Shown here: positions 1,943 through 47,300 of the stretch, in pieces
Position numbering within the stretch: position 1 is the first letter of the stretch
Layout of the letters: each line of letters begins with the position of its first letter
Assembly: GCA_051294905.1 (NCBI GenBank)
Contig: CM119372.1
Location: forward strand, 8,122,001 to 8,186,000
Length of the DNA: 64,000 nucleotides
DNA from: Botryllus schlosseri
Lineage: Eukaryota
Reading direction: 5' to 3'
The notes under the pieces: model-generated
Database searches by the model: none
Told to the model about the DNA's origin: nothing
What the model saw: the letters and a program-made list of their open reading frames with translations, nothing else
Translations under genes and position numbers: made by a program

Positions 1943-3529
1943 CCTCACGAAGCGCATCTGAACCCGAAGTACAAGAGTTGTGATATATTGTTTTTAAAGC
2001 TTACAAAAATGTTTTTAGTTTTTAGTTATATGTTGTCTAATATATAGATATGTCGAACATATTTCCGACTTTGGTGCTTGCGGCAGGGTATGTTTCGTCA
2101 GCTATATCGACGCTTTTGGCGTACCAAGGTTATTGTTGCAAGATCGACGTGTTGTTAGGCTGGTCCACCATTTCTGCGACCAGGTGGTTTGTGGAGTATT
2201 CAACAACTGTTAGCTAGCTACTGCTATCGTGAAAGGTGGTTATATAAGGTCAATAATCAGTTATTAGCAGCAGCTTGAGGCAGTTACATATGCCCAAAGA
2301 GAATAGTGCGCGACTGGACAAGTGGACATGGTCATTATGATAATCCGATTTATCCGAAATACTTCAAGACGGTGTATTTGTAGATGTTCAGATAAAAATA
2401 CAAAATACCAGAACATGCGGACTCCGAGTTAGCTATTCTGTTGCTACTCCGTGTAGTCCTCAAGATGATAGCACGGACCTCTGTCACTTATGTTCCAATT
2501 GGTTGTAGGTAGCAAGGCTGCATCCCTATATAGCGGGCTATTACGATTTTTCGCCTGTAGCTCACGCAGTTTTTCTTCACAAATTACTGTGCCTATATAA
2601 TTAAATTTTGACGTGTGGTGTACGATTGGTAGGCCTATATCATGGCGATTTCTCATGAATATTATACCTGGACATCATGAATAGAACTAACATAAATTTG
2701 ACGTAGTTGTTCACGAAACGAGTGGCCTACTTTTCATTGCTAATGATTGCATTTGCCGAACACGGAAATTTTCAGAATTGCCTTCGTCACATCTCCGTAC
2801 CGAGCCTGCTCGTCTCGTGAGTCGTGCGTGGAAAACGCAAACGATTGGAATGGTTGTTGGTCTGTAGTTTTTGACTTTCGAAGGAAAGAATCAACCATTG
2901 TATCCAATAAAGGGAAAAATAATTTATTGTTAAGTTGATTGAAAGAGCGCTGGCTGGGCAATGCTCGCATGACATATATACAATACATTAATATACATAC
3001 ACTACAGGGCATTTTGCGTCACAAAATTGCTACATCCTCGCGCGGTATCATTCATACATACTGTTTTAATTATTTTTCAGCATTACACCACAATATTACA
3101 GTACAATAATTTTAGAACATAGGGGCAATAATGTGGTGCAGTAGCCACGTACACAACAAAGAGATTTCCGTATAATTGGCGGGTGCACTTCAGGCATTAT
3201 TTTGGGAGCGTCACGAGCGTGTGAACATAATTTGGAGGCTTTTAGGTCTATAGGCACATGGTTTGGGCACTCAACTCGAATTCAAATCGACTCAACTATC
3301 GAATGTAAACATTACATTCGATAACTCAACGGTTCGATTCGAGTCGAAAATATACGTGCTTCCCAGTACCGAAAACATGTAGCACAAAGCGTAATACTCG
3401 ATTCGTAATAATCGTATTCAACCACTGCAACCTACTGCCTTGCGATTTTATCATGCTCAATGGGTCAATATGCTCACATTGTGTGCCCGACTGTCCGTCC
3501 ACTGTACGGGTACGATTGACACACTGCAA

Positions 3530-4215
3530 AAACGTTAACATCGGATCATCCGTATCATTGCCAAAGCCCCACGGGGGCCTGGATGCGCAACTGATAAATC
3601 GCTTCTCAAAAGATTTGGTGTTCTAAACTTAGAAGACATGAGGAAGCTAGAAATTGCCAAGTTAATGTATCAGTTCCATTGCGGTCAATGTCCCTCAAAT
3701 TTCAACGACGTCTTCACCCCAGAGACAAAAGCACAGAAGTACAGCACACGCGTGTCAACCAAGAACAACTACCGTATGATCAGGACGGGATACAAGTAAA
3801 CGCATTGCTCTATCAAGTAGGCTATGCTGGACCCCAATTGTGGAACAACATCTCGCCGGCTATCCGACAGTCGTCGAGCATGTCCGCATTCAAGTCGAAA
3901 TACAAGCAATTTCTTCTAAATGAATACTAGCCAGCCTTCAAGATTACCGGACCACGACCTAACATCGACCTCGCCCTCCGCCACATGCCACCTCATTTTG
4001 TCGCTTGCGTCTTATATTCTCCGCATTACTTTTCATTCAGTGTGCACTGTGCAATGTGCAGTGTGCATGCCTCTTCTTTACTTCGACTGGGCTAAGGTGT
4101 GTGTCTGATCTTAAAAGCTACTCCAAGTTGTTTCGTCACCTTCCTATCATTTTATTGTATCGCAGTCTTGTGATGTTTTGAAATGATTAAAATATTAATA
4201 AACCTGATTGATTGA
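3530..4215 (+). mobile_element. 5'-truncated L2/Crack-type LINE (decayed ORF2 C-terminus plus 3' UTR)
   Basis: Frameshifted remnant LEIAKLMYQFH...YAGPQLWNNISPAIRQSSSMSAFKSKYKQFLLNEY* (stop at 3930), typical of L2/CR1-clade ORF2 ends; the 3' UTR is shared with many other copies and ends in AATAAAC plus a TGAT-type tail. Confidence 0.85.
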
Positions 4216-5311
4216 TAAGTAGCCTACATCTGTCGCAGACACGTAGGGAACATAGGTCGATCGGCATCTAATCAGCTGGTATACATGGCCTTCATAAGAC
4301 GCCGTCTACATGAACATTGCAGTCAGTCACGTGCACAACACATTATACGAACAGTTCTCGCGCAAAATACAACTCTGCTTTTCAAATCCGAATTATAAAG
4401 GGTTTGTCCATCATCATCTAAAATCCAAATTTTGATTCGTTTTCTATGCATAGAATAAGAACAGTTGAAAATATGGTTGGAGTTAATAAATTCTTTACTG
4501 CAATGGATGTAGTTGTGAAAGCAATAAGAACAGTGCGTGTGAAATCATCACTGTCGTCCAGAGTGAGGGTTTGTAGTACTGTGTTGTGTATATCATATCA
4601 GTAGCCCTTATTTATTACATTTGTACTTTTGTAACAACACAACAGGGGAATCCCCTTATATTTAGTCATTTTTGTTTCCGATTAAAAACGAAACAAAGCA
4701 AGTGGAAGCCACATTAAGGTGTAATTAAGGCAAGGGAATATGGCGGAAATAGTGCATATTTGACAATTTCTCATTTCTGAACAACCCGAACCAACGTATG
4801 TAGGAGCATAGCATACTTATGGGAGGAGGTATATGCGGTATGCACCGGAAAAGCTTGATTGATAGCCGCCAGAGGCGGAATTCTCATGTCTGCTGGGCTG
4901 GAACCTGGGAACGACGACAAACCCTAGCTTCGAGATTTCGATTTCGAGTAGCATTGCTGAATGCAGATTTTGGTTATTTGCAGATAATTGCAGTAAAGAA
5001 GATAGGGATGTCGCATGAGTGGTACATCTATCGCTCAGGCTATGACAGACACTTCGTGACGGTAATAAGACAAAGTTATTTGCGAATTATTCGACCCCTC
5101 CTATACTATCACACGGGCGATTGCTATATGTTATAAAATAATCTTAAATCAGCTGTTCTTATACTTCCATCGGCTCAAGACGCCGAAATATACAATGTGA
5201 TAGACAAGAGACAATCATGTAATGAACAGATACGATGATGTCGAATTAACTAAGTGCGATCTATTAACGAACTTCCTCTTCAGCCCGGCGTGGCCTATAC
5301 TAAGTGATTGC

Positions 5312-20670: not shown

Positions 20671-21112
20671 CATTTGTTAAAACCGATTACACGACACAGC
20701 ACGCTCAAACAATACTGTCAGTCGGATCACCTCTACAGAAATGCTGTGTGAACGCACATATCAGTGTGCTGTAAGTTCTCAAGTCTACTTAGGATTGAAA
20801 CGATATGATTTCCATTAATGAAAGAACACATTGTCGCAAGGGCCGTAGAGTTTAGGCACTAGATAATGATTCTCACTACTCGACTCGGATCAACAACATT
20901 GATACTCGATTCAAATAACACATATCTTTACGCCCGCATATTCAAAACTGATGGTCAGCGTTCCACTTGCTACGCCGAGTAAGTAGCGTGGTTAATGTTT
21001 GGTGCCAAAAAAAAACAGAAATAAAACCTATTATCCCATATTTGACCTCGTTTTCAGTTTCTCAGTCAGTAATTAAAGAACCGCCAAGTACAAAAATGAA
21101 AGAAACAACCTC

Positions 21113-24100
21113 ACCGGAAGCAGTAGACACATTCAGACTTTCCACAAGACTACTTGCAGCATCCATATTGCCATTGAATTGACGGCGTATCGTAACGATA
21201 CGCGTGCAAGCGTTTGAAATTTCCGGTGGCACTCCGTCTCCTTCGCTCCCTGCAAAGAAGTCGCTGTAAGGCGCGAGTAGCTTTGATAGCAATACAGAGC
21301 AACATTACCAAAAACGATGAGCGAAGGATTATTCAATCGGACATCACGAACATTTTCTGGATTCAAGAAATCATGATTTTCAGCAACGGTCCCTATGATG
21401 TCCCATTGTTCGTTGCGAAGAACCTAAAAAACATAGTATATTCAAGAAAAAGCGATCACATGACATCAATAACTGTCAGATTATATTTTCATCTGATCAA
21501 GACACACACAATGTACAATGCGATATAATGAACAGATAGGAGGAAGGTGAACGACAAGTTGCAGTCTCTAGAACTGGCATCCACCTCGACCTAATGCCCG
21601 ATGTCACAGTTCTTTTTCGATGTTTATCTCTATTCCGCGGCCCTTACTTTTGAGCGCGTTCTTTCATCGGGTCCTTTTCAAGGCTTTTTTGTCGCCGTAA
21701 CAACAGCGACGCGCTCCCATACAAACACATTGACACGGAATTTACATAAATAGGCATCAACGGATAGCAGTTGTGCGACGTAAATATTAGACTAGGCTTT
21801 TCTCCGATATTCTACAACTTCCGAATCATTATCCATTACCATCAAAACGAGAGTTGGGGTTGGGCAGAACAATGCTAATACTTTAAAATCTGGGCCGAGT
21901 ATGAGATGAAATAACAGGAATCAAGTGAAGAGAGATGATTTCTCGAACACCAAAATTTCACCCCTAAGATGCTAATGAGTAATGACCATTTCTTTTACAA
22001 GTATCACAATCCGAGTTTTTCAATTTCAGTAACGCGAAAGCTTTCAAACTTACACTTGCCATGAAATCACCGTAGTAAATGACACATCTAAAACGTTTGT
22101 CGAAGGAAACATTCACTTCCATTTCTTCAATGAATTAGAATTCCCACAATTTCCTTTTTAGGACTAGTTGCATAAATAACTGGTTGCTGGTACAACATTT
22201 GAATAACGCTTTCAAAAGTACGTTTTGATGAACGTTTATTGAAACTCGAAGAACTTTTCGTGTGCCAGTTATCAAGAGCTACTGGCACGATAAAGGAGAT
22301 ATAACAGAGTTGAATTCAAAACCAAACGTTATTTGTATCATCTGTGTCTCAGGCTCGCATTACTGTTTTCTGCTACCTGTTACTATACGCTGGATTGTTG
22401 CTGTGTTCAGGCTACATTGATGAAACAAGCAGTACCATACCGTACAACAGGGGCGGGCAACTTCTCCAGTCGGCGGGCCGGACATAGGAAATTTAAGTAC
22501 TTGGCGGGCCGGACTGCTGAATCGATACATTATTCGCTCATTTATCCACATATACAAGGAAAAAAATCGTATTTACTGAATTTTAACGACAGTCATGTCA
22601 ATTCAAAGCCATTTCTCGCTGATAATGACGAAGACAGTGTGGATTTTGTCGCTTGCTTTTTTTCAATACTATCTTCTTTTACTTTACTATCAGTGTACAT
22701 GCCTCCTCTTTACATCACCTAGGCCAAGGTGGGTGTCTGATTCCATAGACTACTCCAAGTCGCTTCGACACCTTCCTATCTTTTCATTGTATCGCATTTT
22801 TGTGGTGTATGGAACTGATAAAAATTGCCAATAAACCAATGATGATGAATTTGAGAACAGCATTGTCACACAGGCACCGCCATGTCTGCATCTCTCTGTT
22901 CAATTAACACACAGTGCAATCATTAATTATGATTTCAAGGCGTTCGATAAGCCCGGTACGGTAATCCAAATTTACCAAGATATCAATTCATTAGGGTTGA
23001 GTGCATCGTAAATGCCGATAATGCAAGTCTTCTCACTTCGAGGAACTTACACGTAAGCATAGGGTTACCATATTTGGAAATCTGAAAAGAGGACACTTTT
23101 TCAAAATTTTCAGACTTGCAATACTGGAGGTAAATTTTCCCCACTTCGTGGTCGGTTGACTAATAAATGAAAAAGTCAGCTTTCCGGCTCAGCTCCCGAA
23201 ATAGCCGCCGGAGCGTTACTTCAGTGCTGATTTACTGTATCTCAGTCGAATTTTGCCCTATATTTAACCAACATTCTCAAAAAAGGAGACACAACTTTAA
23301 AAAAAAAAGGACATTTGGGCGTTATCCGAGGACACTTTCAAAAAAGAGGACAGATCCCCTTAAAAGAGGACGTATGGTAACCCTACGTAAGCTCCACTCT
23401 CGCACGCTGCACACACACGCTTATAATAATAACATACAGTCAATAAATTTTGACGTTTAAGCAAGTAGTGCAGAATCTCGGCAGACTAGGGCTGCGGGCC
23501 ACATTATCATGTAAGACGGGGCCCGCCCGTATGTTGCCCGCTCCTGCCATACAAGGAAAGAATCGATCTGGCCACCAATTTTGACCAGACCGACCAACTT
23601 GCTTGGTGTCCATAAATATATCGCATGTCTTATATTGCGGCTAACATATCAAAATATCCCTCAGCAGCAGTTGCCCGGTATTTTAGGGCTGCATCAAAAT
23701 GAAAAATGACAGCTGAGCATGCGACGCTTTAGCATGTGAATTTATAACTTCAAAAGGGCTTGCATTTTTATTCCCATCATAACTCACATAGATCATTTCA
23801 AGCGGCTCCTCCGTTGCATGTACGTGCAGAATCTCCGATGCTCCACAGCTAGCTTTGCTCACAACAGGGGTCAAGGGACAGCTGTAAATTATCAGATTAC
23901 ATTTTTGCAACGCTTTACAGAGTACAAGTGATCACCAGAAAACACGTCCTTATGCGAAAATTCAAGAACTAGGGTCAGCTTGGGTTTTGAGGACCGTGTC
24001 TGGTTTGACAGCTTCACTGACAGACTGGCACATTGTCACGTTCTACTCCAAGAAACGAAGTTGAACTGTACTTGTGCAATTTTCGCCACATGCTAATCCT

Positions 24101-24919
24101 CTGGTAACCTCATAATTTACATACCAGTTTCCACAGACAATGACACGGCCTACATTGAAGTAGAGGCACGAGCGCAGTATCGCTCCCAAATTCATAGGAT
24201 CCAGTATCCCGCACAGTAAAACCCAAATACAATTTCTCCCGTCCAGCGTTGCGGTGGTTTTACACAATTCTTTAGCCAATCCCAGAAAAGGTAACTCCCC
24301 GACTTCCAAACAAACACCCTAGAACAGGAACATATGTAAGTTTTCGAACCATAACAATATCCGCCACACCTACCTGGTGAGGTCTATGGGCTACCATCGA
24401 ATCCATCATTTTCCTATTCGCATAAGTGATTGGAATTTTTCTGTCTGCAGCAACTTCCATGATAGCCGCAATTCGGCTATCAGTTGGTAGAATTTCCCTC
24501 CATCTTTCTAGAAGATGCAACCTGAACAAGAAGGCTGCTGCATTGGAAAGTCGAAACCAACTCGGCAAATTCCCACCTGAATATTGGTCTCCTCGAGACC
24601 TGAAGTGCCACATTACACACTGACCTTCCGTAAAGAATTTCATTGCTCAAGAACCCTACAATCGAAATTTACAAAGGCACGTTATAAACCCAGATGAACA
24701 ATTATACATCCACAACACCCACTTGTTTTGCTCCGTTTTGAAATTTTCAGAATTGTTCCCGTCAATGAGTGCAACGATCCCAACTCGAATAAACCCTGCA
24801 TCAAGAGTAAGTGACAAATTCGACAAATGCATGCAGCAATGGCTACACATGGTACTTGCCCTGCTATTCAAGTAGTGGAACTTGCAAATTGTAGTCGGTA
24901 TGATTCGCTGGACGATCAT
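21113..24919 (-). CDS. MRM1: MRM1-like SpoU/TrmH rRNA 2'-O-methyltransferase, multi-exon (includes 23881-23788, 21423-21309 and ~21251-21113); first and last exons not fully resolved
   Basis: Exons give NEILYG, HRPHQ|GVCLEV, ILDPMNLGAILRS, CPLTPVVSKASCGA, QWDIIGT, PSLIVF|GSEGDG and ESLNVSTAS, collinear with the MRM1/SpoU motifs (DPRNFGAVLRS, CPLTPVVSKSSAGA, GNEG, ESLNVSVA). One ~2.4 kb intron (23787-21424) is filled with TE fragments. Confidence 0.85.
21470..21720 (-). mobile_element. SINE fragment with an L2-derived 3' tail (same family as 30745-31050)
   Basis: Shares GTCAGATTATATTTTCATCTGATCAAGACAC and downstream blocks with 30745-31000. Confidence 0.65.
22648..22848 (+). mobile_element. 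L2-type LINE 3' UTR fragment
   Basis: Conserved CCTAGGCCAAGGTGGGTGTCTGAT motif and AATAAACCAATGATGATG tail, as in other copies. Confidence 0.8.
23060..23385. mobile_element. hAT MITE (TAGGG termini)
   Basis: TIR TAGGGTTACCATA / TATGGTAACCCTA; 8-bp TSD CGTAAGCA / CGTAAGCT; internal AAAAGAGGAC repeats. Confidence 0.85.
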
Positions 24920-25007
24920 GGTAATATAGACTAACTACTAATTACTCGCTACGCGGTCAAGTCAGATCCGCTTTAGCGGTTGAAGGAATGGTGATATCGG
25001 CGTATGG

Positions 25008-25313
25008 CTACAAATTTTTTGACACGGATTTTTCTCCTTTGATTGCTTTCTCTTCATCAGCTAAGAAGTCGTCTTTGTCATAAATAACTTTCAACAATAA
25101 GGAACAACTAGGACAGGTGGCTTCTTCCTCACCAGCCTGCAGGGCTTCTAGCGAAATTTCAAATCTAAAAAGCGGCTCGAGACAGATACAATCAATGCTC
25201 AACAAAAGAAATGAAACCAACCGATCTCCGCATGGACAGGGATAGTAATACATCTCCTCATCCTCGTCGTATTCGAAGTCTTCAATCTCTACCTCATCGT
25301 GATAAATTGACAT
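25008..25313 (-). CDS. DPH3: Diphthamide biosynthesis protein 3 (CSL zinc finger), 82 aa, exons 25313-25222 and 25164-25008
   Basis: [31 protein letters not shown]|[29 protein letters not shown] is the canonical DPH3/KTI11 sequence; 57-nt GT-AG intron. Confidence 0.97.
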
Positions 25314-28425: not shown

Positions 28426-28632
28426 TCATTGTATCGTAGTACAGCTTTTAGCCTGCATACCCTTTCTTCCCATCTCGGTGACTATCTGCACACGTGTTCC
28501 AGGGCTCAAGCTCTCGGCATCGGTGCAAGCGGATACGTGAACAAAAACATCCTGTCCACCGTCTGAAGGAGTGACGAATCCGTATCCTTTTTCGTGGTTG
28601 AAAAACTTGATTTCTCCTTCCATCGAACCCAT
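28426..28632 (-). CDS. Stand-alone cold-shock protein (bacterial CspA-like), 68 aa, intronless
   Basis: [35 protein letters not shown]...[14 protein letters not shown]: RNP1 (KGYGFV) and RNP2 (VFVH), no additional domain. ATG in an A-rich context after a pyrimidine-rich AG acceptor. Confidence 0.92.
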
Positions 28633-35077: not shown

Positions 35078-38000
35078 TTAAAACTCATTGTGCAAGTTGT
35101 GGGTGCTCAAATTCCCATCATGCTCCAAAATTAATTCAGCGATTTCTGGGTAAAGAGTATCTGAAGCCTCCGATCCATATAAAAATTCTAGATGATCCCA
35201 TTGCTTCATCTCTTTCGTCCTAACCAAAGTTTTAAGCTTCGGTATGATCTCCAGCACATCTTCGGTGTCAGCAAACCAGTCCTCTGTGCCCCAGTATAAA
35301 GCAACGGGGACATTTACTGAAGTTAAATCGTACGTAGGTGGGACTGTTGACCCGTAAGCAGCCATATTCTCTCCGTCGCTAGGGTAGCGATACTTACGAG
35401 TGTCATTATGTGCTATCATCTAAAACGAAGTGAAATTCTTTAAACCATTGTGAGCGCAAAAGAGATATTCCATCAAGAATTCACCTGAGCGAAATGAATA
35501 ATATTTTGAACCGAGGTCCCTGCCGGTATGTGCGACAAATAGACAGGGATCTTGTCAACACAGTATCTGGACGGCGTGAAGCCAGCGATACTGAGCAGCA
35601 AATTCTCACCGAGAAATCGGAAGTCTTCGTGGGTATCCACAAACGTATGAAGTTTCGTGGACAGCCATTTACCTAAAAAAAAGAAAATTTCACGACGCAA
35701 CCAAACAAAACAAACAGTTAATTTTTCACCTGCTCTGGAATTGGGCAGAAGCTCGGCTCCTCCCATGGCCCATTGCCCAACTTCGAGGGTGTTATAAAAT
35801 TTGGCCAGGTATTTGATTGGACTCCTGAAGCTGCTCAAACTGAACACGGGACCGAGAGCAATGAACAGATGAACCTTGTTATTGAATTCCTGATCCTCTG
35901 CCAACTTTGCAAACATCATCAAGGTGCCCTATTAGAAGGCAACACCAACTACTTTTCAAAGAAATCATTGCCGTGTTGCAAGACTAGATATGTCCAGAAA
36001 AAGACGCTGAAAGCAAGTAGGAGACACCCGAGCAAGGCTATCCGACAGATGACTCAATCCAAGCCCTAACGAAGGACTCAAATAATTTTCCATATCCAAG
36101 GGAGCACTTCTAGCTAAGACACGACTCAAGAGTCGTTACTACCCTGAATTTTTGACACTGCAGAGATATTCTTTGGGTGACATCACACGACTGCAAAGGG
36201 AATTTTGGTTCAATAAATATGTTCGTGAATTAGCCTACAACTACAGGTTACGTAACCCAACAAATCGATATTATATGATACGCCAACATCAAGGAGAACC
36301 TTATTGCTGCGTCACGACTGCTAATCGTATAATACTGGGCTGATAGGCATAATTTCCAGCTGCACGCAGCAGTGATATTTGATCAGATTGGAACTCTCGG
36401 TCATCTAATTTTTTGAATTCATGTGTGAAAACAAGGATTCGTATGAATATATGGACCAGAACTTGGTTGTATGCGGGAAACACCAAACCATTGAAACCGA
36501 TAAACACAACATTTTCAAATCGAATTATATGCGGACAAAGCATCAACTGAAATCCAGCACCCACCACCCATTTCCCAAAACTTGAGATGTGATATAACAT
36601 GTTTGACCTGCTGGGCTTTTTTCGAAAAAATTCATATAATTTTAAGCTACAACTACTGAAATTTATGCTGCGGGTTGGTGGTTCGCTAGTCAAGGTATAT
36701 GCCAGGGGACCAGGGGTGACCACTGACCAACCTTTTGGCTATTCACCGCCGCATTCCAGGGCATAGCCATAATGAACTAACTGGACGCCAAATGCCCATC
36801 TTAAACTGTCATATCCATGTCCACATTGTCCAGTGAACTCCGGACTAATCTACTTTTCCACAAATGGTTTGCTATACGCACCGAAATTGCGAGTGGCGAT
36901 GTTATGAATAGTTACAGAGATCAGTTACGGTCGCCAACACATACAAATTAAATTAGGTACATGTCAACGGCCGCACAAATTTCCTTCTACGGCCGTAGAT
37001 TGGCCAACCCTGGTATATGGCATTGCAGAAATGTACAGAAAATTTGTGACTATTTAGCGTGATTGAGTGGCATCATAGAAATGCAACCTGAGAGTGTCCA
37101 ACATAGGAGATTTTGTTGTTGCTAGTCGTCTCTCTTATATGATCCACCATCGCCGGAAGATCCATCTCTGAAAACTGTTGCCAGCTGTACCTCCAAAAGC
37201 TCTCGTCCACATCAGGGTTCAGTGACTCGTGCCGCCTTGAATAAGTGTTTCCCCGCACATTGCCAAGCCAGACATCAATACCTGAAAACCTCGACTATAA
37301 TTGTTCCTGTTGAACTAATCTTGCAAGAATGTTAATTCACTTATTGTGAGTGCAATTTATTCCACACATAAATTCCAGCACATTTCAAGGGAGTTGAAGC
37401 ATTGTCTGAATTCGACTTAAATAAGTTGAAAGAGCTCTTAGATCGAGTACCGTAGTTGTGTATATGCATGCAACATTCAAAGTAGTTTACAAGTGAATTC
37501 GGAACTTGTTGTTTGTTAAACTTATACATGAACTTTGCTAAGTCAAAAATATATATGTCCTCAACTTAGAGAATGCGAAGTTCCTTATAATATGTAGATA
37601 AGTGATGATAGACGGTCAGTGCAGCAATGGCCCGAATGGCTATATTATGCAGTACTTGCGGGGTTTCAAAATAGTTTGGGTTGCAGATCCTCACATAATA
37701 ATACTGCAAATGGCAGTGAACAATGGAGAAATAAAGACTTTTAAGCAGAGGCCTAGGAACAATTCTGTTTAGTCACCACAAGACACCGGTATTGCGAGAG
37801 ATCTTTGAGTAAACATGGCATTAAACATGTGATAGCTAGCAGAGTTGACCAGTAAGTAAGCAATGGTAACTTAATGGATTGCGCTGGTCTACTTGCACTA
37901 GGCCTACTCACTCAATCATTCAGTTTTCAGACGACTTACTCTTCCAGTTTTTCAATAAGAAGTATTTTTACGGGTTATAGTGTAATAACTAATGGACAAT

Positions 38001-39897
38001 ATAGCTCGTACATCACAGTCACATAATGTGTTTCCAAGATTGCACCCAGTACTAACACCATTAGTCGTTTCTTTTGTTATTACAGAGGTACATTACACAA
38101 TTTCAAAAGATCACTGATAAAATTCTGCAAACCCTCTTCACAAATCTACCACACAATGATATCAATCAATTTGAGTTACTTTACTAGCTACTTTTGGCAT
38201 GTCTTGGAAATCACTACTTCCAGCTGTAGCCTCTACTTCAGTGGTTCTCCAACTTTTTTAGACATGCCCCCCCTCTTTGATAGTGAAAAATTTCGCGCCC
38301 CCCTTATCGTCACATCACACAACGAAACCACAATGCTAGCAATCCAAACAGATACTTTAATGGCATAGAAGACTATTGATGAGAGAATTCTCAAATATGA
38401 AATTCGGACTATACACAGAGCAAGAACCATGAACTGGAGGTATATCGCTCGAAGCGCAAAATTTTTTCCAGTTGACTGCAACTTCGCGCCCCCCAGTTTG
38501 AGACGCTCTGCTCTACTTGAATAAAAATAAACAGCATTTCACTTCCATTTGAGTAACACCAATTGTTTCAACGGAGTGGTAAGATCGACAAATGAAACAT
38601 GACATGCCTTTTTGTCACAAGCATATTATATTATGGAAAAATAGACTGTGAAGCGACTTTAATCTGGCCATTTCAAAATAATAGTCTACTCCACGAAGTT
38701 CAAAATACCTAGAATCCAAAGCAAGTGATGTCACTAAATTATATCGGTATGATTGATTTGTAATTGTGTAGCTAATAAAAATGACACTAAGATATGTCTT
38801 ATTGTCCATCTGGTGAAACTGTCATTAGCATCCACATAGTTCACTTGCTTCATTCTGAAACCATCAAGTTTTATGAAGGGATCAAGGGTGGATATTCATA
38901 ACCATTAAGGCCTTGGGCACTAAATAAAAATAGAAAAGGAACATTACCTTTATCTGCTAATTGAAAAGCAAGACTCTTTTTTGGCCCATTTGAAATCCAA
39001 TTCGCAGAATCTGCCAGAAGTCCGTGTTGCAAAAGCACTGCGGGTCTCCGTGTCAAAGGCACTTGGGAACTTGGTAGGTTTATCCTATGCAGTCCCAAAA
39101 TGTAGCCATCTTTCGTTTTGACAGAATGCTCTTCAACCGGATAACCTTCAAGACGAGCGCTATGGTGAAGAAATCTTTGTGTTTGTATTTACCACTAACC
39201 CGGATTCCAGAGTGGTGCTTATCCAAGCTAACCCGACCTTACGCCTAACCCTAACGCAAGCTGGGTCTAGTGTATTTTCTTAATTACAACAGCATGACCA
39301 TCACCAATAAGGGTTCCCAGTTAACATGTCAAAAATTATTATTGTGGATAAGAAAGTAGATTAGATCAAGACCCTTCTTATTAGTCTACGCAGCCGCTCT
39401 AGCCAGGGACCAGGGTAAATAGAAAGAAGTACGGTAGGCTAACTTACCATAGCTTTTAATTATTTGAGGTACAGTCATAAAGCATTCCTGGATAACATTA
39501 TCTTCTTCCTTGGAATCAGATTCTTCACCCCAACTTTCAATTTTTTGTTGGATAGAACGAACGAGATTGTCTACCGAGATGGCATCATCCTCCTTTTTTA
39601 CTTTTCTTCTGGAAACACTGTCCCGTACAAAATAATAAACCATGAAGGTATGTTTTAAAGTAATACACGATATGCTATCAATTGAATAGTATATTTATAT
39701 CGCAATGATTCCGAATATTTTCGGCTGACACTCGTCAGGGGTAATCGGCAGCAACTAGTAGAGAATTGTGTAGAATTGTAGAGTGCATACCTTTCTGCAA
39801 TATAAGATCGCACGAAAAATCCGCAAATAAGGCCCGCGGTGAAAATAATACTTTCTTTCTTGAGCAGCTTCAGTTGCATTTCGCTCGTCAATATCAT
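35078..39897 (-). CDS. Acid/gastric lipase family (LIPA/LIPF-like alpha/beta hydrolase), 462 aa, 7 exons: 39897-39791, 39608-39448, 39145-38948, 37281-37088, 35928-35730, 35672-35485, 35419-35078
   Basis: All phases are consistent. Motifs: GYPVEEH..T.DGYIL, VLLQHGLL, DVWLGNVRGNTYSR, GHSQ|G (Ser), PAGTSVQN, DWFAD (Asp), WDHLEF (His), so the catalytic triad is intact. Confidence 0.93.
36703..37012. mobile_element. Probable hAT MITE in lipase intron 4
   Basis: CAGGG...CCCTG ends; near-perfect 8-bp flanks GTATATGC / GTATATGG; the TIR match beyond 5 bp is weak. Confidence 0.5.
37330..37530 (-). mobile_element. Old L2-type LINE ORF2 C-terminal fragment (second family)
   Basis: MYKFNKQQVPNSLVNYF...HNYGTRS...CAGIYVWNKL matches the L2 ORF2 end pattern. 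Confidence 0.65.
38239..38510. mobile_element. hAT MITE in lipase intron 3
   Basis: CAGTGGTTCTCCAAC start, degenerate right end, perfect 8-bp TSD CTCTACTT. Confidence 0.8.
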
Positions 39898-40918
39898 GTC
39901 ATACTATTCTCACCATACAATATCAGCCATCGACTGTAAAGTTCATGTGTTGAGTGTTTACATACGCCAGAATCAGGGAACTTGATATTTTTAGATATCC
40001 CTGGCCAGAATGCATTCGGATTACGTAATCACACAACATGGTGGTCACACTGGCGTAGGTCCCAGGAGTTATCCAATGAGTCGTGTGAAGTTGCAGCTAA
40101 TGAATGTTTCGACCCAGTTGCAAACATACCAGTTAGCAATCGGTAATATGGCATAAATTATGCGTGGAACTGAGCCACTGCGTACAATGGCACCATTCAA
40201 TTTTCAACAACCACCGATTCCGGACGCGTATTCGTAATGTTATAGCTCCTACAGTATTCACCGCCGCGCACTTTCAGATTCGGTTTTTACGTTTATTGAC
40301 TTTGGTTGCGCAGTTTGCACTGTCGTCACATATTGAACGTGTAACTCTGAGCTGTGTCAACGACTTCCGGACATGTTTCGAGCCAAGGATTTCGACCATC
40401 CTCACCTCGCATTGCGCCGTATGATAATTAAGCTAATGGCCATGCATAATCGAGTCCCAAAGCGTGTCAGTATTCCAGGGGTAATTGAACTATACCAGCC
40501 CTACCGATGAGGACACCTACAGTCGTAGATTTCCACTCATTGACCTTACAAAACCGTCGTTCCGACCCTAGACCGAGCAAACTACTATCATATTCTGATT
40601 CTGCCATAAGTGATGAGCGTCAAACCAATTTGCTGCATGTCAGATGTCGTTTTTAATTCAACAGGTCGATTCACTTGTTGCGTGGATGGAAAGAAATGAT
40701 ACTGTAACACACAAAAATTGGAAAATACACACAAAAGGTAAATGTATTGCAAATTCACTCATGTAACTGGATATACCACGAGGTGGAAACCTCGCCAGTT
40801 ATTCCAGACACCCGAAGTAAAAAGACAATGGCAGATAACAAAAGTCGAAAACGAAATCTGCGGTACGGGTACCGTACTATCACAAGAATGTGCATTTCCC
40901 GTGACAACGTACGGGCTA

Positions 40919-41137
40919 TCAATGTGGTTGGGGATCCGGAATGCAAACTTTTGCTTGCAAGCCCTTCTGTCCTTTTTCGGGAACTACTGATACCATTTGT
41001 CCTTCTACCAGAGTTTTGAATCCACTACCAGCGATGGCCGAGTGGTGAACAAATATGTCAGGTCCACTTTCAGGGGTGATAAATCCATAACCCTTATCTT
41101 CGTTGAAGAATTTCACGGTTCCACGAACTTCAGTCAT
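40919..41137 (-). CDS. Stand-alone cold-shock protein (bacterial CspA-like), 72 aa, intronless
   Basis: [64 protein letters not shown]...: full Csp pattern, no other domain. The ORF-track start at 41194 is GTG; the ATG at 41137 is preferred. Confidence 0.94.
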
Positions 41138-42459
41138 TCTTTTTTTAAAACTTTGACCGTACGGAGACTTAAACGAGGAGAAGAGACCGCTCACGAATAC
41201 GATTACTTTTCAGTGTGGCGAAATACGAGACAGAGAACGCATGTTCACTAATTTACGACCTCCTGTGGGCATGGCGAGTCGCTGAGCCATGATTCATCAA
41301 ATTTATCACCATGAATTTTATAACATCCACCACTCCATATTTATTAGTTGCTATCCGAAGGAGAAGAATTAAATATAGGTTATGGAATATTATTGGACTT
41401 TATAACAAGTTTCAGCATTTAATTATGATGTCGCATAGCATTGGGCTGTAGTCAATAGGACTTTCTAGCAAATGTCCAGTTACAAAAGCTTATAATATTT
41501 GTTTAGGTCCAATGCAATTTTCATGAAATAATTTGCAGTCATACAAATGAAATATGGTAAAACTATAATACGACAATCTTCTCACAAAATCCGGTAAGAC
41601 TATAATAATTAACAAAAGAAGAAAGCGAAATGTATTTCTTGTTCTGTTTGGCGCAGCTAGTGGGAGAATTGGCATTTATTGGCCATTTGTTTTTGAAAAT
41701 CAACTATAACGAATTTGGTCCGTATTCTTATTCGCTCCAAATGTCCGCATTCGGATCACGGTCTGTCAGTTGAGTAGCACTGTGCGTAGATTGTCGGATT
41801 CCCAATTTTCGGAATCCTTAATCAATTCTCAATCCGGCACCGGTCCGAAAAAATACTGGTGGTAAATTTCCAACTCATAGTCCGAAATAATGCTGCTAAA
41901 ATCAAATAATTTGTTCATGTTTCACTGAGAAAATCCAGTTAAAATCCGACTTACAAAGCAAATTAAAAATCCGGACCCAGTCCGGCTACATTAAAAATCG
42001 ACGAAATCCGCCACCCACTCATGTTCTTCCGGCGAACTGGTCCCGTCCTTCCCTGACCTTGTTCTATAATTAATATCGCATTTCATGTGTGTGATTTTCG
42101 CCAATATATTTATCGCTTAATTCAATCTTGCTCCCGCCACCGTAAATGGCGGGTATTGATCCGTTTATATTCGTTTATATTCGAGGTGACCTAAGTCGCG
42201 AATGTATTTATTTTCAATTTCATGTTTCCTTTCCCATGATACATGGATGAATAAAATACTTGAAACCCAAAAGTGGCTCAGGGTACCATAGACTGCAACG
42301 CTCTGAGACTTTTCCAACAATTTAAACTGTAGGAAAATATGTCTGTGAATAATGTCAAAACACAGCAAGTGTTGTTTGAGCTGACCTGTTCTTTCGAAAC
42401 AGTAAAGTTCTCGACAAACGGTCAAGTATCATGGTAAAGTTTATTCATAAAATTTTATC

Positions 42460-44095
42460 AATTCAAAACATCACAAGACTGCAATACAATGAATGATAGG
42501 AAGATGCCGAAACGACTAGGAGTAGTCTTTGAGATTATAGACACCCACCTGAACCTAGACGATGTAAAGAGGAGGCATGCGTCCACATCGTCCAAATATC
42601 ATATGATCGACCGAAAAGATCATCTCTCCATCAAATATGCCGGAGTTGATGTGCGGAACAGTATCCCGCCGGCCATCCGACAGTCGACGAGCATGGCCAC
42701 ATTCAAGTCGAAATACTAGCAACTACTTCTAAATAAATACTAGTCCATCCTCAACATTACCGGACCAAGACCTGACCTATCGATCTCGCCTTCCTTGACA
42801 TGTCACCCCATATTTTGTCGCTTGCTTTTTTCTATACTATCTTATTTTACTTTCCATTGAGTGGGCATGCCTCCTCTTTACATCGCCTAGGCCAGTGGTT
42901 CCCAACCGGGGGGGAATTCCCCCCTTGGGGGGAATTTTGAAATTTTTAGGGGGGAATCTGGCTTAATTTTTTTAGGGGAAATCTGGCTTTGGCATTGTAT
43001 CGGAAGATACACTGGGTTCACAAGGTTTTTAGATTTTTATGGTATAGAACTGTTAAGTAGAAATTAGTTCTTTGCAATTGTATGTTTCTTTGGCGGATTT
43101 CAAGCTAGGTGAATGCTTAAATGTCTTCCGTAGATATTACGCCCCCTGATAAAGTGGGGCTCACGAGACGATTTCGTTAGGTCCGCGACAACCTCTCGAC
43201 GACCAAATTGCTACTAAGCAGGAAAACTTCAAGCCGAATTCAGCACAAGGCCGCTAGTAAATTGTTTAACTTTTTAAGCCAACATATGATCTAACGTGAA
43301 AAACATAACGTACCAAATTCATAGATTCAACTCAAGTCCATAGCAAGCGGACTTGGTGATTTATTTTTCGTCAGCGGCTACCCGACCGGTCAAAAACAAG
43401 TCAAATTTGACTGTACTTTACCAAAGTTTAGTGCGGTCCGCCTACGCCATAGTTCGAACATATCTGAATATGTTTGGCCATTAATTGCTCAATCAACAAA
43501 TGTTTGCGCGTTAAAAAGCACATTTTTTTTAGTCACAGGCAACTTTTTCATAGGGGGGAATTTTAGCTCAAATATCGGCCAAGGGGGGAACGAGACGAAA
43601 AAGGTTGGGAACCACTGGCCTAGGCCAAGGTGGGTGTCTGATTCATCCATAGACTACTCCAATCGCTTCGACACCTCCCTATCTTTTCATTGTATCGCAT
43701 TTTTGTGGTGCATTGAACTGATAAAAATTGCTAATAAACCAATGATGATGATGATGATGCACACTGAATGAAAGTAAAATAAGATAATATAAAATGGCAA
43801 GCGATGAAATCAGGTGGCAAGTAACGGAAGGCGAAATCGATATGTCTGGTCGTGGTCCGGTAAATGGTGAGGACTGACTAGTATTCATTCAGTAGAAATG
43901 ACTCGTATTTCGACTTGAATGTGGACATGCTCGACGACTTTCGGATAGTCGACGAGATACTGTTCCACACTTCAGGTCCGGCATATTTGAATATAGATAA
44001 CTAAGGTAAACCGGTTTACCTTAGTTATATATAATTTGATAAATCGATGGATCTTTTTTGTCCACCATATGATAGTTAGACGACGTGGACGTGCA
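42460..44095. mobile_element. Cluster of three L2 3' fragments (-: ~42460-42560; +: ~42558-42892 continuing at 43618-43758; -: ~43760-44095)
   Basis: Shared ORF2 tail and UTR motifs in alternating orientations; the plus copy is split by a hAT MITE. Confidence 0.85.
42893..43617. mobile_element. hAT MITE nested in an L2 3' UTR
   Basis: TIR CAGTGGTTCCCAACC / GGTTGGGAACCACTG; perfect TSD GCCTAGGC. Confidence 0.93.
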
Positions 44096-44367
44096 GCTTA
44101 GTATAATTGTTCTTGTACTGTACATACATGCTTGTGAAGGTTTTGGGATTCGGAGCGTGTCTTCATAAAATTGTTTCCGTAAGTCTCCGGCAAGTAAGTA
44201 GAGAAAAAACTTCCGGTCTGCTCAACACCACGATAGGTAAAGAAGGACCACCCAGCTCAAACGCACGTTGGCGCCCTTCATCAATGCTGTGAATGGTATT
44301 TCTGAAATAACAACAACAACACTACATCCGTAGTCACTCGACAATCGGGTTCTACTTTTTGTGCTAG

Positions 44368-47300
44368 GGAATGTGAGATGCAAACCTCTGCGGCAAATGA
44401 GAGATCCCCGGAATGCGGTAAGAAATGGAAATATGTATTTATTTATCGTTAATTCCTATATGCTGTTAGACAGTTCATCATTTACTGGCACCACCAATGT
44501 CAACCAGTAGCACTCTGTGGTCAAGTGAAATTCAGATTATTTTTAAAGATTATTACCGGTATATTAAATTTCATCTAATCAATGCACCACAAGATTGCGA
44601 TACAATGAAATGATGGAAATTTATATAACTCAATGATATATTTAGAACGTATATTACTATATAGATTCTATATGAAGTCGATTTCGACATTACAGATGAA
44701 AATTTGGTGATTTCATTTTTTTTTTTCATTTTCAACTGACATCGCAAGACCTAGTTGCACTTTTAGTTTCAGATAAAGCCGATAATGGGGTCAATTAAAG
44801 TGAAATTCGTGTGAATCTTGATTTATGAGTGCAAAGTTAACTGGCATAGATTGTGTAAGTCTCCAATATGTTGATGGTTTTTATTTTAGCCTGTACTTTT
44901 ACACTTGAACAGCAACACTGCATTAACACTGCAGTGAGTAGATTGAACGGAATTGACATGTACAACTTTTTAACAGGATGTGTAAATGAGACCAAAGCCT
45001 TCTTGAGCAGTCCTGTCTATTACATATTTGTGGTAGTTGTGACAATAATCATCTTCACTGTGCTACTTGTGGAACTTATTATTGATGCACTGCTATACAC
45101 AAGTAAGTTGAGCATGTTTACCTACGGTACTTTCAGATTGCACGAAATTATAGACCGTGTTTTGATGACTTTAGATGATTATGAGAACTATGATGAACTC
45201 AGAAAAGTATCGATTGCGCTACATTGGTTTGCGTTTGCTGTACTGGTCGGATTCCTGATTGAGGTATTTGAATGAATACGGTACTTTATTTGCACTGTAC
45301 ATGTATTCTGTTGAGTGGTGGCACTACTTGATGACACTTTGATATCAATTGATGCTGGTCAGACTTGTGTATTGTCTAGACCGGTGGTTTTTAACCTTTT
45401 TTCTCCAGCGCCCCCTTTAAAAAATTGCCTGGGTCGGCGCCTCCCTATTTAAGGACTGTAGTAAAAATTAAGGGCGGAAGTCCGGTTTCTGGTTGGGACT
45501 TCACTATTAGAACACTCGACTAATTAACGGTCTATTTGTATGTGCTATGTTTTACCAACTATCGGGTAAGGCCTACGGGCTCATAGCATTTGGTTCGAGA
45601 TCGATGTACATATCCCAAATTCTCCTCTGCTATTGGCAATACGGTGAAGTTAATTGTATTTAGTTTTGTTTTATTGCTCTGTATGACTGCTGAATCAACT
45701 GAAAATGTGGTAGAGATTTGCACACATTAAATTTAGTCCTGCACCAAGCTCTTAACTTCAACATGAATTGGGGCAACAACACTAAGCAGTATCATCCTTT
45801 ATGATACGATGAAGAAATATTATGACGATATAGTTTTGTAGCTCTCAAATACAAGTATATTTATTTAATCATTTTGGCCTTAAAGCTTCGAAACATGTTT
45901 AATGTACAAAGGGCATCACTCTCCAAAGTTGTACAGTAGCCTACAGTGCCTTTTCAATTTGCAGTGCGCTGCAGGATACAATACCTAGTTCAAAACATTT
46001 TGTGGAAAATAACCCAAGCTATTGGTATAAGCATCAGTTTATTAATATTTTCATCATTTCAAAACGCCACAAAACTGCCCTACAATGAAAAGATAGGAAG
46101 GTGTCGAAACGACTTGGAGTAGCTAGCGTCACGGCAGTGTTATAAGGGGGAATTGGCAATCCAAAAGTACGCCAAATTCCTTTTACATGAATTAAAATCA
46201 CCCGCTGCATTCATTGAAACAGGGTCGGTGGATATTTCGCTATGAGCGCAACGAAAAACGTGATTTGACAGATTTTGTCGTTTGTTAGTTTTCAATGAGA
46301 ACTCAGGGATATATAGAACTATTGTTCTACTAAATAATCTAAGAGCTTCTTGGAGGTACAGAACTTCAATATACAATTGACGTCATACATACATACATAC
46401 ATACATACATATGACGTCATATTGCGAGATACGATTGTTGATATACAAGGTTCTTTCCAATTCTCTACTAGTTGCTGACGATTACCCCTGACGAGTGTCA
46501 GCCGAAAATCTTCGTGTTCATTTCAATATGAATATACTGTTCAATACTAAATAATCTAAAGTCCTTACTAGCCTACATAATGCGCCCCCCCCCCATTTCG
46601 CCCCCTGAGCGTTTCCGCCCCCTTCAAAATCCAAATCGCCCCTAGGGGCGCTGGAGACTAGATTAAGAACCACTTGTCTAGACCAGTGCTCTTCAACCGG
46701 GGTTGTCGTACACCCTAGGGTGTACCAGAATTTGCAAAGGGTGTACCACTCGGATGGGGTGTACAGGGGTGTACCAGATCCGAATTACAATGAGCCGATT
46801 GCTAGCTATCACAAAGGCAGGTTTATGGGTCAGTACAGGTTGACGCACAGATTGATGAGCAATATTGTACGATGTTATCTCAGGTGTAATACTGTACACC
46901 GCTTGATTGTGATGTCATAAGCAAATAATTCTCCTATTCATTTGGCCGTCGGCAATAGACCAATGGTTCCGTTTGGTGTTGGAAAGTATGCAGTTAACAA
47001 ACATGTGTTCAGCTAGTCATTTGTCTTTTAATGATTTTTGAGGGAACCGCCGCGATAGCTCAAACTTCTTGAATCGGTACTTCCTACCCGACTAATAAAC
47101 ACCGCAATGCACTTGCACAATGCACATAAATGAAGTGACGTAGCCAGCCAGGGTCGAAACAGCTTCCATGTTGAAATCGAAACCCTTTCGTTTTAAAATG
47201 CCGATTTTATGTCCAATATTTCGCCATGCATTTGCAATTTAGTATTTTGTTATTAGTGATGCAAATTAGCGACAATAGACTGTGTATAGCGGCATACGAT

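What the first reader, a model, noticed from the sequence alone, without database searches (positions are those of the whole stretch)
40919..41210. Bacterial-type cold-shock protein gene no. 2, strongly resembling gammaproteobacterial CspA
[40 protein letters not shown]....GQKGLQA follows, nearly motif for motif, the pattern I know from Pseudomonas-type CspA ([33 protein letters not shown]....GQKG.QA). It lies 1 kb upstream of a seven-exon animal lipase, which argues against contamination. It is intronless, has an A-rich start context and follows a pyrimidine-rich acceptor (CTCTTCTCCTCGTTTAAG). This is the strongest horizontal-transfer candidate in the window.
Basis: partly seen in the sequence, partly recalled or inferred. 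Interest (0 to 1): 0.8.

Follow-up and report, generated by a model that had tools for sequence, protein, structure and literature searches.

The report
Bacterial-type cold-shock gene in sea squirt
A sea-squirt chromosome carries a small, very highly expressed gene for a bacterial-style cold-shock (RNA-binding) protein; it is real and most likely came from bacteria long ago, but the same gene family was already reported in the related sea squirt Styela clava in 2020.

Summary
On the minus strand, 41137-40919 encodes a 72-aa single cold-shock-domain protein (Pfam CSD, E 1e-20). It is 60-75% identical to bacterial CspA-type proteins, against 30-38% for animal Y-box and Lin28 domains.

It is a working animal gene, not contamination:
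- DNA depth is flat across the gene.
- RNA reads define one unspliced 582-nt mRNA. A template-switch oligo marks its 5' end at 41216. An ATTAAA signal and a poly(A) tail mark its 3' end at 40635.
- That mRNA takes about 0.24% of the reads sampled from one RNA-seq run.
- Third-codon GC is low (0.36), and dN/dS against orthologues is about 0.1-0.3.

The neighbouring lipase places the window in a stolidobranch ascidian that is not Styela clava. S. clava has a CSP ORF in the same slot (CSP, acid lipase, SpoU methylase). Wei et al. 2020 already reported three cold-induced, bacteria-derived Csp genes in S. clava. This is therefore a new member of a known kind.

What this adds:
- The six ascidian CSPs form one clan (support 99/98).
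- The synteny is shared across species, so the acquisition predates their split.

Caveats:
- The donor is unresolved.
- An AU test on 70 columns cannot reject a single eukaryotic clan.

The scan also noted CSP no. 1 in this window and a third copy elsewhere in this genome.

The parts
40635..41216 (-). Complete unspliced mRNA of CSP no. 2 (582 nt): 5' end at 41216, cleavage/poly(A) site at 40635
   Evidence: RNA run X23 has a depth of about 2,700-4,600 (both mate orientations summed) over the three bins 40679-41269 and about 400 in the 3'-end bin. Depth is about zero in the flanking bins. 1394 reads carry the template-switch-oligo sequence beyond 41216, and 385 reads carry a T-run (poly(A) on the minus strand) before 40634. 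No joints were seen in this interval. The X15 RNA contig of 611 nt covers 40646-41254 without a break.
41138..41216 (-). 5' UTR (79 nt), with no upstream AUG.
   Evidence: the first ATG of the mRNA is at nt 80; an A8/A9 length difference at 41139 in 1549 of 3862 reads, and a C/G SNP at 41211 in about half of the reads.
40919..41137 (-). Coding sequence: 72 codons plus a TGA stop
   Evidence: No difference reaching 10% of reads inside the CDS in any run laid.
40949..41125 (-). Cold-shock domain (residues 5-63), a five-stranded beta-barrel
   Evidence: Pfam CSD E 1.1e-20. AlphaFold2 model with pLDDT 87.5 and five strands. Foldseek TM 0.83-0.87 and rmsd 1.1-1.3 A to CspC, CspE, CspA and Bc-Csp.
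41078..41095 (-). RNP1-type nucleic-acid-binding motif KGYGFI
   Evidence: K15, G16, G18 and F19 are invariant or nearly so in the alignment with bacterial Csps.
41042..41056 (-). RNP2-type motif IFVHH
   Evidence: F29 and H31 are invariant and V30 nearly so.
40635..40918 (-). 3' UTR (284 nt) with the poly(A) signal ATTAAA at 40657-40652, 17 nt before the cleavage site
28426..28632 (-). Paralogue CSP no. 1 (68 aa, 48-49% identical), same strand, 12 kb downstream
   Evidence: At least 14 probable RNA runs hold 76-85% of its sampled words. It falls in the same clan in the trees.
35081..39879 (-). Neighbouring multi-exon lysosomal/gastric-type acid lipase gene (context; the syntenic partner of the CSP gene in other ascidians)
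   Evidence: tblastn of ascidian lipases gives 6 collinear exon blocks. The order is collinear with the Styela clava locus L003.

Best explanation
This is a domesticated bacterial-type cold-shock protein gene of a stolidobranch ascidian. It is the positional orthologue of a Csp ORF that lies in the same genomic slot in Styela clava, the species in which three horizontally acquired Csp genes have been published. The inferred history has three steps. A single-domain CspA-family gene entered an ancestral ascidian genome once. It acquired a eukaryotic promoter, a cap-dependent 5' UTR and an ATTAAA poly(A) signal. It then duplicated, giving at least two copies in this window. It has since been inherited vertically in a fixed position upstream of an acid-lipase gene. 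The product is a 72-aa OB-fold protein with intact RNP1 and RNP2 surfaces. By inference from bacterial Csps, it binds single-stranded RNA or DNA with low sequence specificity. In that role it would act as an abundant RNA chaperone that keeps mRNAs unfolded and translatable, particularly at low temperature. Shown here: gene integrity, integration, mRNA anatomy, very high expression, purifying selection, orthology, synteny and fold. Inferred: the bacterial origin, the RNA-chaperone activity and the link to cold.
For: Domain and fold:
- Pfam CSD at E 1e-20.
- PDB sequence scores are 55-69 bits for bacterial Csps, about 32 for Y-box and 26-30 for Lin28. Bacterial Csps align with at most a one-residue length difference, whereas the eukaryotic domains are 5-8 residues longer.
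- The AF2 model has pLDDT 87.5. Foldseek gives TM 0.83-0.87 at 50-55% identity to CspC, CspE and CspA, against 30-38% identity to YB-1 and Lin28.

Similarity:
- The named top hits among 5.8 billion proteins are all bacterial, at 60-75% identity.
- Against the ascidian profile, bacterial Csps score 95-106 bits. Plant CSDs score 54-57 bits and dinoflagellate CSDs 46 bits or less.

Integration:
- One DNA contig covers 39739-41494 with zero differences at depth 16.5, the same as its neighbours.
- Spliced animal genes lie on both sides.

Eukaryotic expression:
- The mRNA has a capped 5' end, carries a poly(A) tail and is unspliced.
- About 30,900 of 12.9 million sampled reads come from it.
- ATTAAA lies 17 nt before the cleavage site, and the first AUG is the start codon.
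- There is no excess of sigma-70 promoter or terminator patterns.

Amelioration and selection:
- GC3 is 0.36.
- dN is 0.22-0.48 with dS saturated, giving dN/dS of about 0.1-0.3.

Orthology:
- S. clava locus L003 has a CSP ORF 1.3 kb upstream of the orthologous lipase, followed by a SpoU methylase. The order is collinear with the window.
- Two other species' contigs also show CSP followed by lipase.

Single origin:
- The six ascidian CSPs form one clan, with SH-aLRT 97 and bootstrap/SH-aLRT 99/98.

Literature:
- In S. clava the Csps cluster with bacteria and are induced at 12 and 2 degrees C (PMC7540406).
Against: - The phylogeny has only about 70 columns. An AU test does not reject a tree in which ascidian, plant and dinoflagellate CSDs form one clan (p 0.615). 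The bacterial nesting therefore rests on similarity, domain architecture and taxonomic distribution, not on a decisive tree.
- Branches around the ascidian clan have low support (31-49% bootstrap), so no donor lineage can be named.
- Metazoan Y-box and Lin28 sequences could not be placed in the tree. They were compared only through PDB scores.
- Absence from non-stolidobranch tunicates and from other animals was not tested exhaustively. The exhaustive search was swamped by multi-CSD proteins.
- RNA binding and cold induction were not tested for this gene.
- It scores below the NCBIfam cut-offs of every named enterobacterial Csp equivalog.
Confidence: 0.8

Rival explanations
1. The gene is not of bacterial origin. 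Either it descends vertically from an old eukaryotic single-CSD gene that most animals lost, or it was acquired from another eukaryote, such as an alga, whose CSDs look bacterial.
For: The AU test does not reject a single clan of all eukaryotic CSDs sampled (p 0.615, and the constrained tree is even 3.4 lnL units better). Plants and dinoflagellates do carry bacterial-like CSDs. Algal-derived genes have been proposed for Ciona (cited in PMC7540406).
Against: Ascidian CSPs score 95-106 bits with bacterial Csps. Plant domains score 54-57 bits and dinoflagellate domains 46 or less. Path lengths from the ascidian node are 0.74 to the nearest bacterium, 2.25 to plants and 4.56 to dinoflagellates. 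Plant and dinoflagellate proteins are multi-domain, whereas this one is a bare CSD like bacterial Csps. No animal relative outside the ascidians appeared among the listed best hits (120 per search) of two searches.
Confidence: 0.1
2. Same gene and same origin, but its main role is not a cold response. It would be a constitutive, very abundant general mRNA-binding or translation-modulating protein, functionally analogous to Y-box proteins.
For: It takes about 0.24% of the reads in a bulk RNA-seq run that was picked by species label, not by this gene. Transcript-sized shares of its words occur in more than 15 runs from several studies. Ascidian-specific changes are conserved in all six proteins: Trp to Phe in KFF, and a C-terminal Cys in 'QAKxC' (QATEC in S. 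clava).
Against: The S. clava Csp genes are reported to be induced at 12 and 2 degrees C. The temperature and tissue of the runs used here are unknown to me.
Confidence: 0.3
3. Bacterial contamination or a chimeric assembly placed a bacterial gene in an animal scaffold.
For: All named best hits are bacterial.
Against: DNA depth is flat and a single error-free contig spans the gene and its flanks. The mRNA is capped and polyadenylated with a eukaryotic poly(A) signal. GC3 is 0.36. The position next to the same lipase is conserved in three other ascidian data sets, including an independent chromosome-level S. clava assembly.
Confidence: 0.01
4. A decaying, non-functional insertion (pseudogene) that happens to keep an open frame.
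For: None beyond its small size.
Against: Expression is very high. dN/dS is well below 1 with saturated dS. The RNP motifs are intact. There are no CDS variants in the runs laid.
Confidence: 0.02

Closest known systems
Horizontally transferred Csp genes of Styela clava (Wei et al. 2020, Mol Ecol Resour, PMC7540406)
   Same: Both are stand-alone bacterial-type CSD proteins in a stolidobranch ascidian, with several copies in the genome. An S. clava CSP ORF (L003:8472-8687) occupies the same slot upstream of the orthologous acid lipase and SpoU methylase. Both fall in the same protein clan.
   Different: The species differs: the lipases are 62-77% identical over five of the six exon blocks and about 40% over the other, and the proteins are 55-57% identical. 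This copy is intronless, whereas two of the three S. clava genes are said to have introns. The second copy here lies between the lipase and the SpoU methylase, an interval that is only about 460 bp long and holds no CSP match in S. clava. Cold induction was shown there and not tested here. The paper presents the transfer as an S. clava feature; the shared synteny shows that it is older.
Bacterial CspA-family proteins (E. coli CspA/CspC/CspE, Bacillus CspB)
   Same: Length of about 70 aa, a single CSD, RNP1/RNP2 motifs and a five-stranded OB barrel. Identity is 50-55% to solved structures and up to 75% to environmental sequences.
   Different: The gene has eukaryotic signals (cap, ATTAAA, poly(A)) and no bacterial cspA-type long 5' UTR. 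The conserved Trp of KWFN is Phe in all ascidian copies. There is an extra C-terminal tail with a conserved Cys. It scores below every NCBIfam equivalog cut-off.
Animal CSD proteins (Y-box YB-1/YBX2, Lin28, CARHSP1)
   Same: The same fold and the same nucleic-acid-binding surface.
   Different: Identity is only 30-38%. Their domains are 5-8 residues longer. They carry additional domains (basic/aromatic tail, CCHC knuckles), whereas this protein has none.
Bacterial cellulose synthase (CesA) of tunicates
   Same: An accepted precedent for an ancient bacterium-to-tunicate gene transfer that became a functional host gene (cited in PMC7540406).
   Different: The protein and function are unrelated. 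CesA is shared by all tunicates, whereas the range of the Csp genes beyond stolidobranchs is unknown.

Membership tests
CspA-family stand-alone cold-shock proteins (Pfam PF00313, single domain) | One CSD of about 65-70 aa and nothing else | tested here: met
   72 aa. The CSD covers residues 5-63, and the only extra is a 9-residue tail.
CspA-family stand-alone cold-shock proteins (Pfam PF00313, single domain) | RNP1 (K-G-F/Y-G-F-I) and RNP2 (V/I-F-V-H-F/H) motifs | tested here: met
   KGYGFI and IFVHH are present. The key residues are invariant in the alignment with 42 bacterial proteins.
CspA-family stand-alone cold-shock proteins (Pfam PF00313, single domain) | Five-stranded antiparallel beta-barrel (OB fold) | tested here: met
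   AF2 pLDDT 87.5 with five strands. TM 0.83-0.87 to CspC, CspE and CspA. This is a prediction, not an experiment.
CspA-family stand-alone cold-shock proteins (Pfam PF00313, single domain) | Bacterial-length loops (no eukaryotic insertion) | tested here: met
   Aligned spans are equal to within one residue for bacterial chains and 5-8 residues longer for YB-1 and Lin28.
CspA-family stand-alone cold-shock proteins (Pfam PF00313, single domain) | ssRNA/ssDNA binding and RNA-chaperone activity | not testable with these tools
   Needs the protein: gel shift, a molecular-beacon melting assay, or complementation of a multiple-csp-deletion strain of E. coli.
Named enterobacterial equivalogs (NCBIfam CspE, CspC, CspA, CspD) | Score at or above the curated cut-off of the model | tested here: not met
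   The best score is CspE at 87.4 bits against a cut-off of 120. The others are 58-76 bits against 115-152. It is not an equivalog of any named paralogue.
Ascidian horizontally acquired Csp genes (Wei et al. 2020) | Orthology or common descent with the S. clava genes | tested here: met
   The syntenic slot is the same: CSP, lipase, SpoU methylase. The ascidian clan has support 99/98.
Ascidian horizontally acquired Csp genes (Wei et al. 2020) | Placement among bacterial sequences in a tree | tested here: inconclusive
   The free tree nests the clan among bacteria, but with weak support. The AU test cannot reject a eukaryote-only clan.
Ascidian horizontally acquired Csp genes (Wei et al. 2020) | Induction by low temperature | not tested
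   Only one read-laying run was available, and the temperature of the runs is unknown.
Eukaryotic Y-box / Lin28 CSD proteins | CSD joined to auxiliary domains; eukaryotic-type CSD sequence | tested here: not met
   There are no extra domains. Identity is 30-38%, and scores are 26-33 bits against 55-69 for bacterial Csps.

The most novel reading that the evidence does not exclude
The bacterial-type CSP gene and the acid-lipase gene downstream of it form a conserved, functionally coupled pair in styelid ascidians, and are at least sometimes co-transcribed as one dicistronic or read-through RNA. The evidence is one RNA contig from another species (L002). It carries the complete CSP ORF, a 774-nt spacer and the fully spliced 475-aa lipase ORF. 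The CSP-lipase order is also kept in four species. If true, a horizontally acquired gene would have been wired into a tunicate operon-like unit.
Probability: 0.12. Interest if true: 0.55.

Novelty: new member of a known kind. Interest (0 to 1): 0.38.

Why it matters
Functional bacterium-to-animal gene transfers are rare, and claims of them are often contamination artefacts. This case passes every integration and expression test available here. It also extends the published Styela clava report. The gene sits in the same syntenic slot in several stolidobranch ascidians, and the copies form one clan. The acquisition is therefore old and vertically inherited, not a recent S. clava-specific adaptation linked to invasiveness. 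Its very high expression suggests a core cellular role. For the scan itself, the gene is a positive control for detecting horizontal transfer. It also shows that short-domain trees cannot settle the donor question by themselves.

Tried and rejected
1. The exhaustive profile search of 1.84 billion representatives gave a top 150 made up of multi-CSD proteins. Seven inspected were arginine/glycine-rich tandem-CSD proteins that look actinobacterial. Of ten others, three had named members: two dinoflagellates and one plant. Single-domain ascidian relatives are merged into bacterial 50% clusters, so the search was useless for mapping the animal range.
3. The Clavelina lepadiformis lipase-homologue locus L006 is not syntenic (its neighbours are C1q and carboxylesterases) and has no CSP. 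It says nothing about presence or absence in aplousobranchs.
4. No spliced-leader loose end appeared among the best-supported loose ends; 1522 weaker ones were not listed.
5. The loose ends at 40825, 40964, 41140 and 41186 look like Illumina adapter read-through from short inserts, not biology.
6. The bacterial promoter/terminator scan found no excess over shuffles.
7. Rfam found nothing in the window.
8. No supplementary tables of Wei et al. are held, so I could not match their three gene coordinates.
9. Naming a donor lineage was rejected because support is too low.

Full report
OBSERVATION

The minus strand of 40919-41194 is an open frame. The ORF listing entry starts at a GTG, but the biologically meaningful start is the ATG at 41137.

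It matches Pfam CSD (PF00313) at E 1.1e-20 and 73.7 bits, against a cut-off of 27. It matches NCBIfam bacterial Csp models at up to 87 bits. Every one of those scores is below the equivalog cut-off, so it is not an equivalog of any named enterobacterial paralogue.

A tblastn of the protein against the window finds one paralogue at 28632-28426 on the same strand, 48-49% identical.

A REAL, INTEGRATED, EXPRESSED ANIMAL GENE

I laid four runs on 39300-45200.

DNA contigs (X1):
- One contig of 1756 nt covers 39739-41494 with zero differences.
- Its word depth is 16.5, the same as the unique flanks (15-18).
- There is no coverage step at the gene's borders.

Raw RNA reads (X23, a run chosen by species label, not by this gene):
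- Depth is about 2,700-4,600 over the three bins 40679-41269 and about 400 in the 3'-end bin. It is essentially zero in the adjacent bins.
- About 30,900 of 12.9 million sampled reads map here, which is roughly 0.24% of the library.
- 1394 reads continue beyond 41216 into CCCCATGTACTCTGCGTTGATACCACTGCT. From my own knowledge, that is the reverse complement of the SMART template-switch oligo, so it marks the mRNA 5' end.
- 385 reads continue before 40634 into a T-run, which is a poly(A) tail on the minus strand.
- No joint is reported within the transcript.
- A 611-nt contig from an independent 2015 RNA data set (X15) covers 40646-41254 in one piece.

The resulting mRNA is 582 nt. It has a 79-nt 5' UTR without an upstream AUG, the CDS, and a 284-nt 3' UTR. 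ATTAAA lies 17 nt before a CA cleavage site.

It is not a splice site. No spliced-leader loose end appeared among the best-supported ones.

There is no excess of bacterial promoter or terminator patterns. CDS GC is 0.45 and GC3 is 0.36. The low, AT-rich third positions are unlike high-GC donors such as Pseudomonas or Streptomyces (my own knowledge). The two neighbouring host genes have GC3 of 0.48 and 0.57.

No variant reaching 10% of reads falls in the CDS. The variants seen are an A8/A9 length difference at 41139 and SNPs at 41147 and 41211, all in the 5' UTR.

WHAT ORGANISM, AND IS IT KNOWN?

The closest protein relatives are three unannotated Logan proteins, P0001, P0121 and P0122, at 66-71% identity. 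They share an ascidian-specific signature: KFF instead of the bacterial KWF, and a C-terminal 'QAKxC' with a conserved Cys.

Their contigs are informative:
- P0121 lies 1.6 kb upstream of an Abhydro_lipase exon on the same strand.
- P0122 lies on an RNA contig, L002, that also carries a complete spliced 475-aa acid lipase.

That lipase is 79% identical to 'lysosomal acid lipase-like' of Styela clava. Other tunicates come next among the named single-lipase hits, at 44-46%. The window's own lipase exons are 62-77% identical to the S. clava protein in five of the six exon blocks and about 40% in the sixth. The window is therefore from a stolidobranch ascidian other than S. clava. An earlier scan note on this genome also calls it a sea squirt.

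A literature search found Wei et al. 2020 (PMC7540406). They report three Csp-like genes on one S. clava contig, two of them with introns. The top BLAST hits are all bacterial, the genes cluster with bacteria in an NJ tree, and coverage equals the flanks. Expression is up-regulated at 12 and 2 degrees C. The authors interpret this as horizontal transfer that helps cold adaptation. No other paper in the library reports this for another ascidian. A transcription-factor census counts 9 CSD genes in S. clava against 4 in each of two botryllids.

ORTHOLOGY AND AGE

I fetched 24 kb around the S. clava lipase (L003). A CSP ORF lies at L003:8472-8687, 1.3 kb upstream of the lipase and on the same strand. 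It is not among the called genes of that assembly.

tblastx shows a collinear order in both species:
- S. clava: CSP, lipase, SpoU-type methylase.
- Window: CSP2 (41137-40919), lipase (39879-35081), CSP1 (28632-28426), SpoU methylase (about 25313-21100).

CSP1 has no counterpart in the 460-bp lipase-SpoU spacer of S. clava.

Between orthologues, dS is saturated (above 1.5 or not computable) while dN is 0.22-0.48. That gives dN/dS of about 0.1-0.3, which indicates long divergence under purifying selection.

In a tree with the 211 best bacterial hits, the six ascidian proteins form one clan with SH-aLRT 97. With 80 bacterial proteins plus plant and dinoflagellate CSDs, the clan has bootstrap/SH-aLRT 99/98. 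This fits one acquisition followed by duplication and vertical descent. The event predates the split of at least these five sources: the window species, S. clava and the three unnamed SRA samples.

BACTERIAL OR EUKARYOTIC ORIGIN?

Similarity is clear:
- Bacterial Csps score 95-106 bits against the ascidian profile. Plant CSDs score 54-57 bits and dinoflagellate CSDs 46 or less.
- Against solved structures, bacterial Csps score 55-69 bits at 50-55% identity. Y-box scores about 32 bits at 36-38% identity, and Lin28 scores 26-30 bits at 30-34% identity.
- The eukaryotic domains are also 5-8 residues longer.

In the free ML tree the ascidian clan sits among bacteria. Path lengths from the ascidian node are 0.74 to the nearest bacterium, 2.25 to plants and 4.56 to dinoflagellates. 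The surrounding branches have only 31-49% bootstrap support.

An AU test does not reject a tree in which all sampled eukaryotic CSDs form one clan (p 0.615). With about 70 columns the tree has no power, and no donor can be named.

Bacterial origin therefore rests on four things: similarity, the bare single-domain architecture, the bacterial loop lengths, and the apparent restriction to ascidians. I rate it likely, not proven.

MECHANISM

The AlphaFold2 model (pLDDT 87.5) is a five-stranded barrel. It superposes on CspC, CspE and CspA at TM 0.83-0.87 and rmsd 1.1-1.3 A. RNP1 (KGYGFI) and RNP2 (IFVHH) are intact.

From established knowledge of CspA and CspB, such proteins bind single-stranded RNA or DNA through the aromatic and basic face. 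They melt secondary structure, which aids translation and antitermination in the cold.

I infer that the ascidian protein is an abundant cytoplasmic RNA chaperone. Its very high expression in an arbitrary library leaves open that it acts constitutively and not only in the cold.

VERDICT

The finding is real, and the horizontal-transfer reading is the best one. The family is already published for S. clava, so this is a new member of a known kind.

The useful additions are:
- the conserved synteny and the single clan, which show an older origin than one species;
- the exact mRNA anatomy;
- the expression level;
- the caution about the power of the tree.

The scan also flagged CSP no. 1 in this window and a third, intron-bearing copy on another piece of this genome.

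Noticed in passing
L002:1-2783 (Logan RNA contig of SRR3402057): A single RNA contig carries the CSP ORF (136-348), a 774-nt spacer with an AATAAA at 514, and the fully spliced 475-aa acid-lipase ORF (1123-2550). This may be a read-through or dicistronic transcript of the two syntenic genes. In the window species the CSP mRNA ends at its own poly(A) site, and the lipase is silent in the run examined.
   Followed up: partly
L003:8472-8687 (Styela clava OZ123514.1, GCA_964204865.2): A complete 71-aa bacterial-type CSP ORF lies upstream of the lipase. It is not among the genes called for this chromosome-level assembly in the collection. Small intronless HGT genes appear to be missed by annotation.
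   Followed up: partly
window 28426-28632 (-): Paralogue CSP no. 1 lies between the lipase and the SpoU methylase. The corresponding S. clava spacer is only about 460 bp long and holds no CSP match. CSP no. 1 is the longest branch in the ascidian clan, it lacks the 'GSGFK' segment, and many RNA runs hold it.
   Followed up: partly
window 42452-44027 and 39711-39768: Very high-copy repeats, with DNA word depth of 10^4-10^5 against about 16 for unique sequence. Many contigs show deletion joints and an inverted joint at 43618/43757. These are probably transposable-element or MITE copies upstream of the CSP gene, plus a short one at the 5' end of the lipase gene.
   Followed up: no
window 41139: The A8 run just before the start codon reads as A9 in about 40% of RNA reads (1549 of 3862) and as A10 in an older RNA contig, but as A8 in the DNA contigs. 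The cause could be an allele, polymerase slippage or a sequencing artefact. It lies 2 nt upstream of the AUG.
   Followed up: no
window 21100-25313 (-): A SpoU-type RNA methyltransferase gene, collinear with the S. clava locus. It serves as the downstream synteny anchor.
   Followed up: partly
P0339-P0488: Proteins with 2-12 tandem CSDs dominate the exhaustive search. They include tandem-CSD proteins with arginine/glycine-rich linkers that look actinobacterial, dinoflagellate proteins with up to 12 repeats (Gymnodinium, Symbiodinium) and a plant glycine-rich protein.
   Followed up: partly
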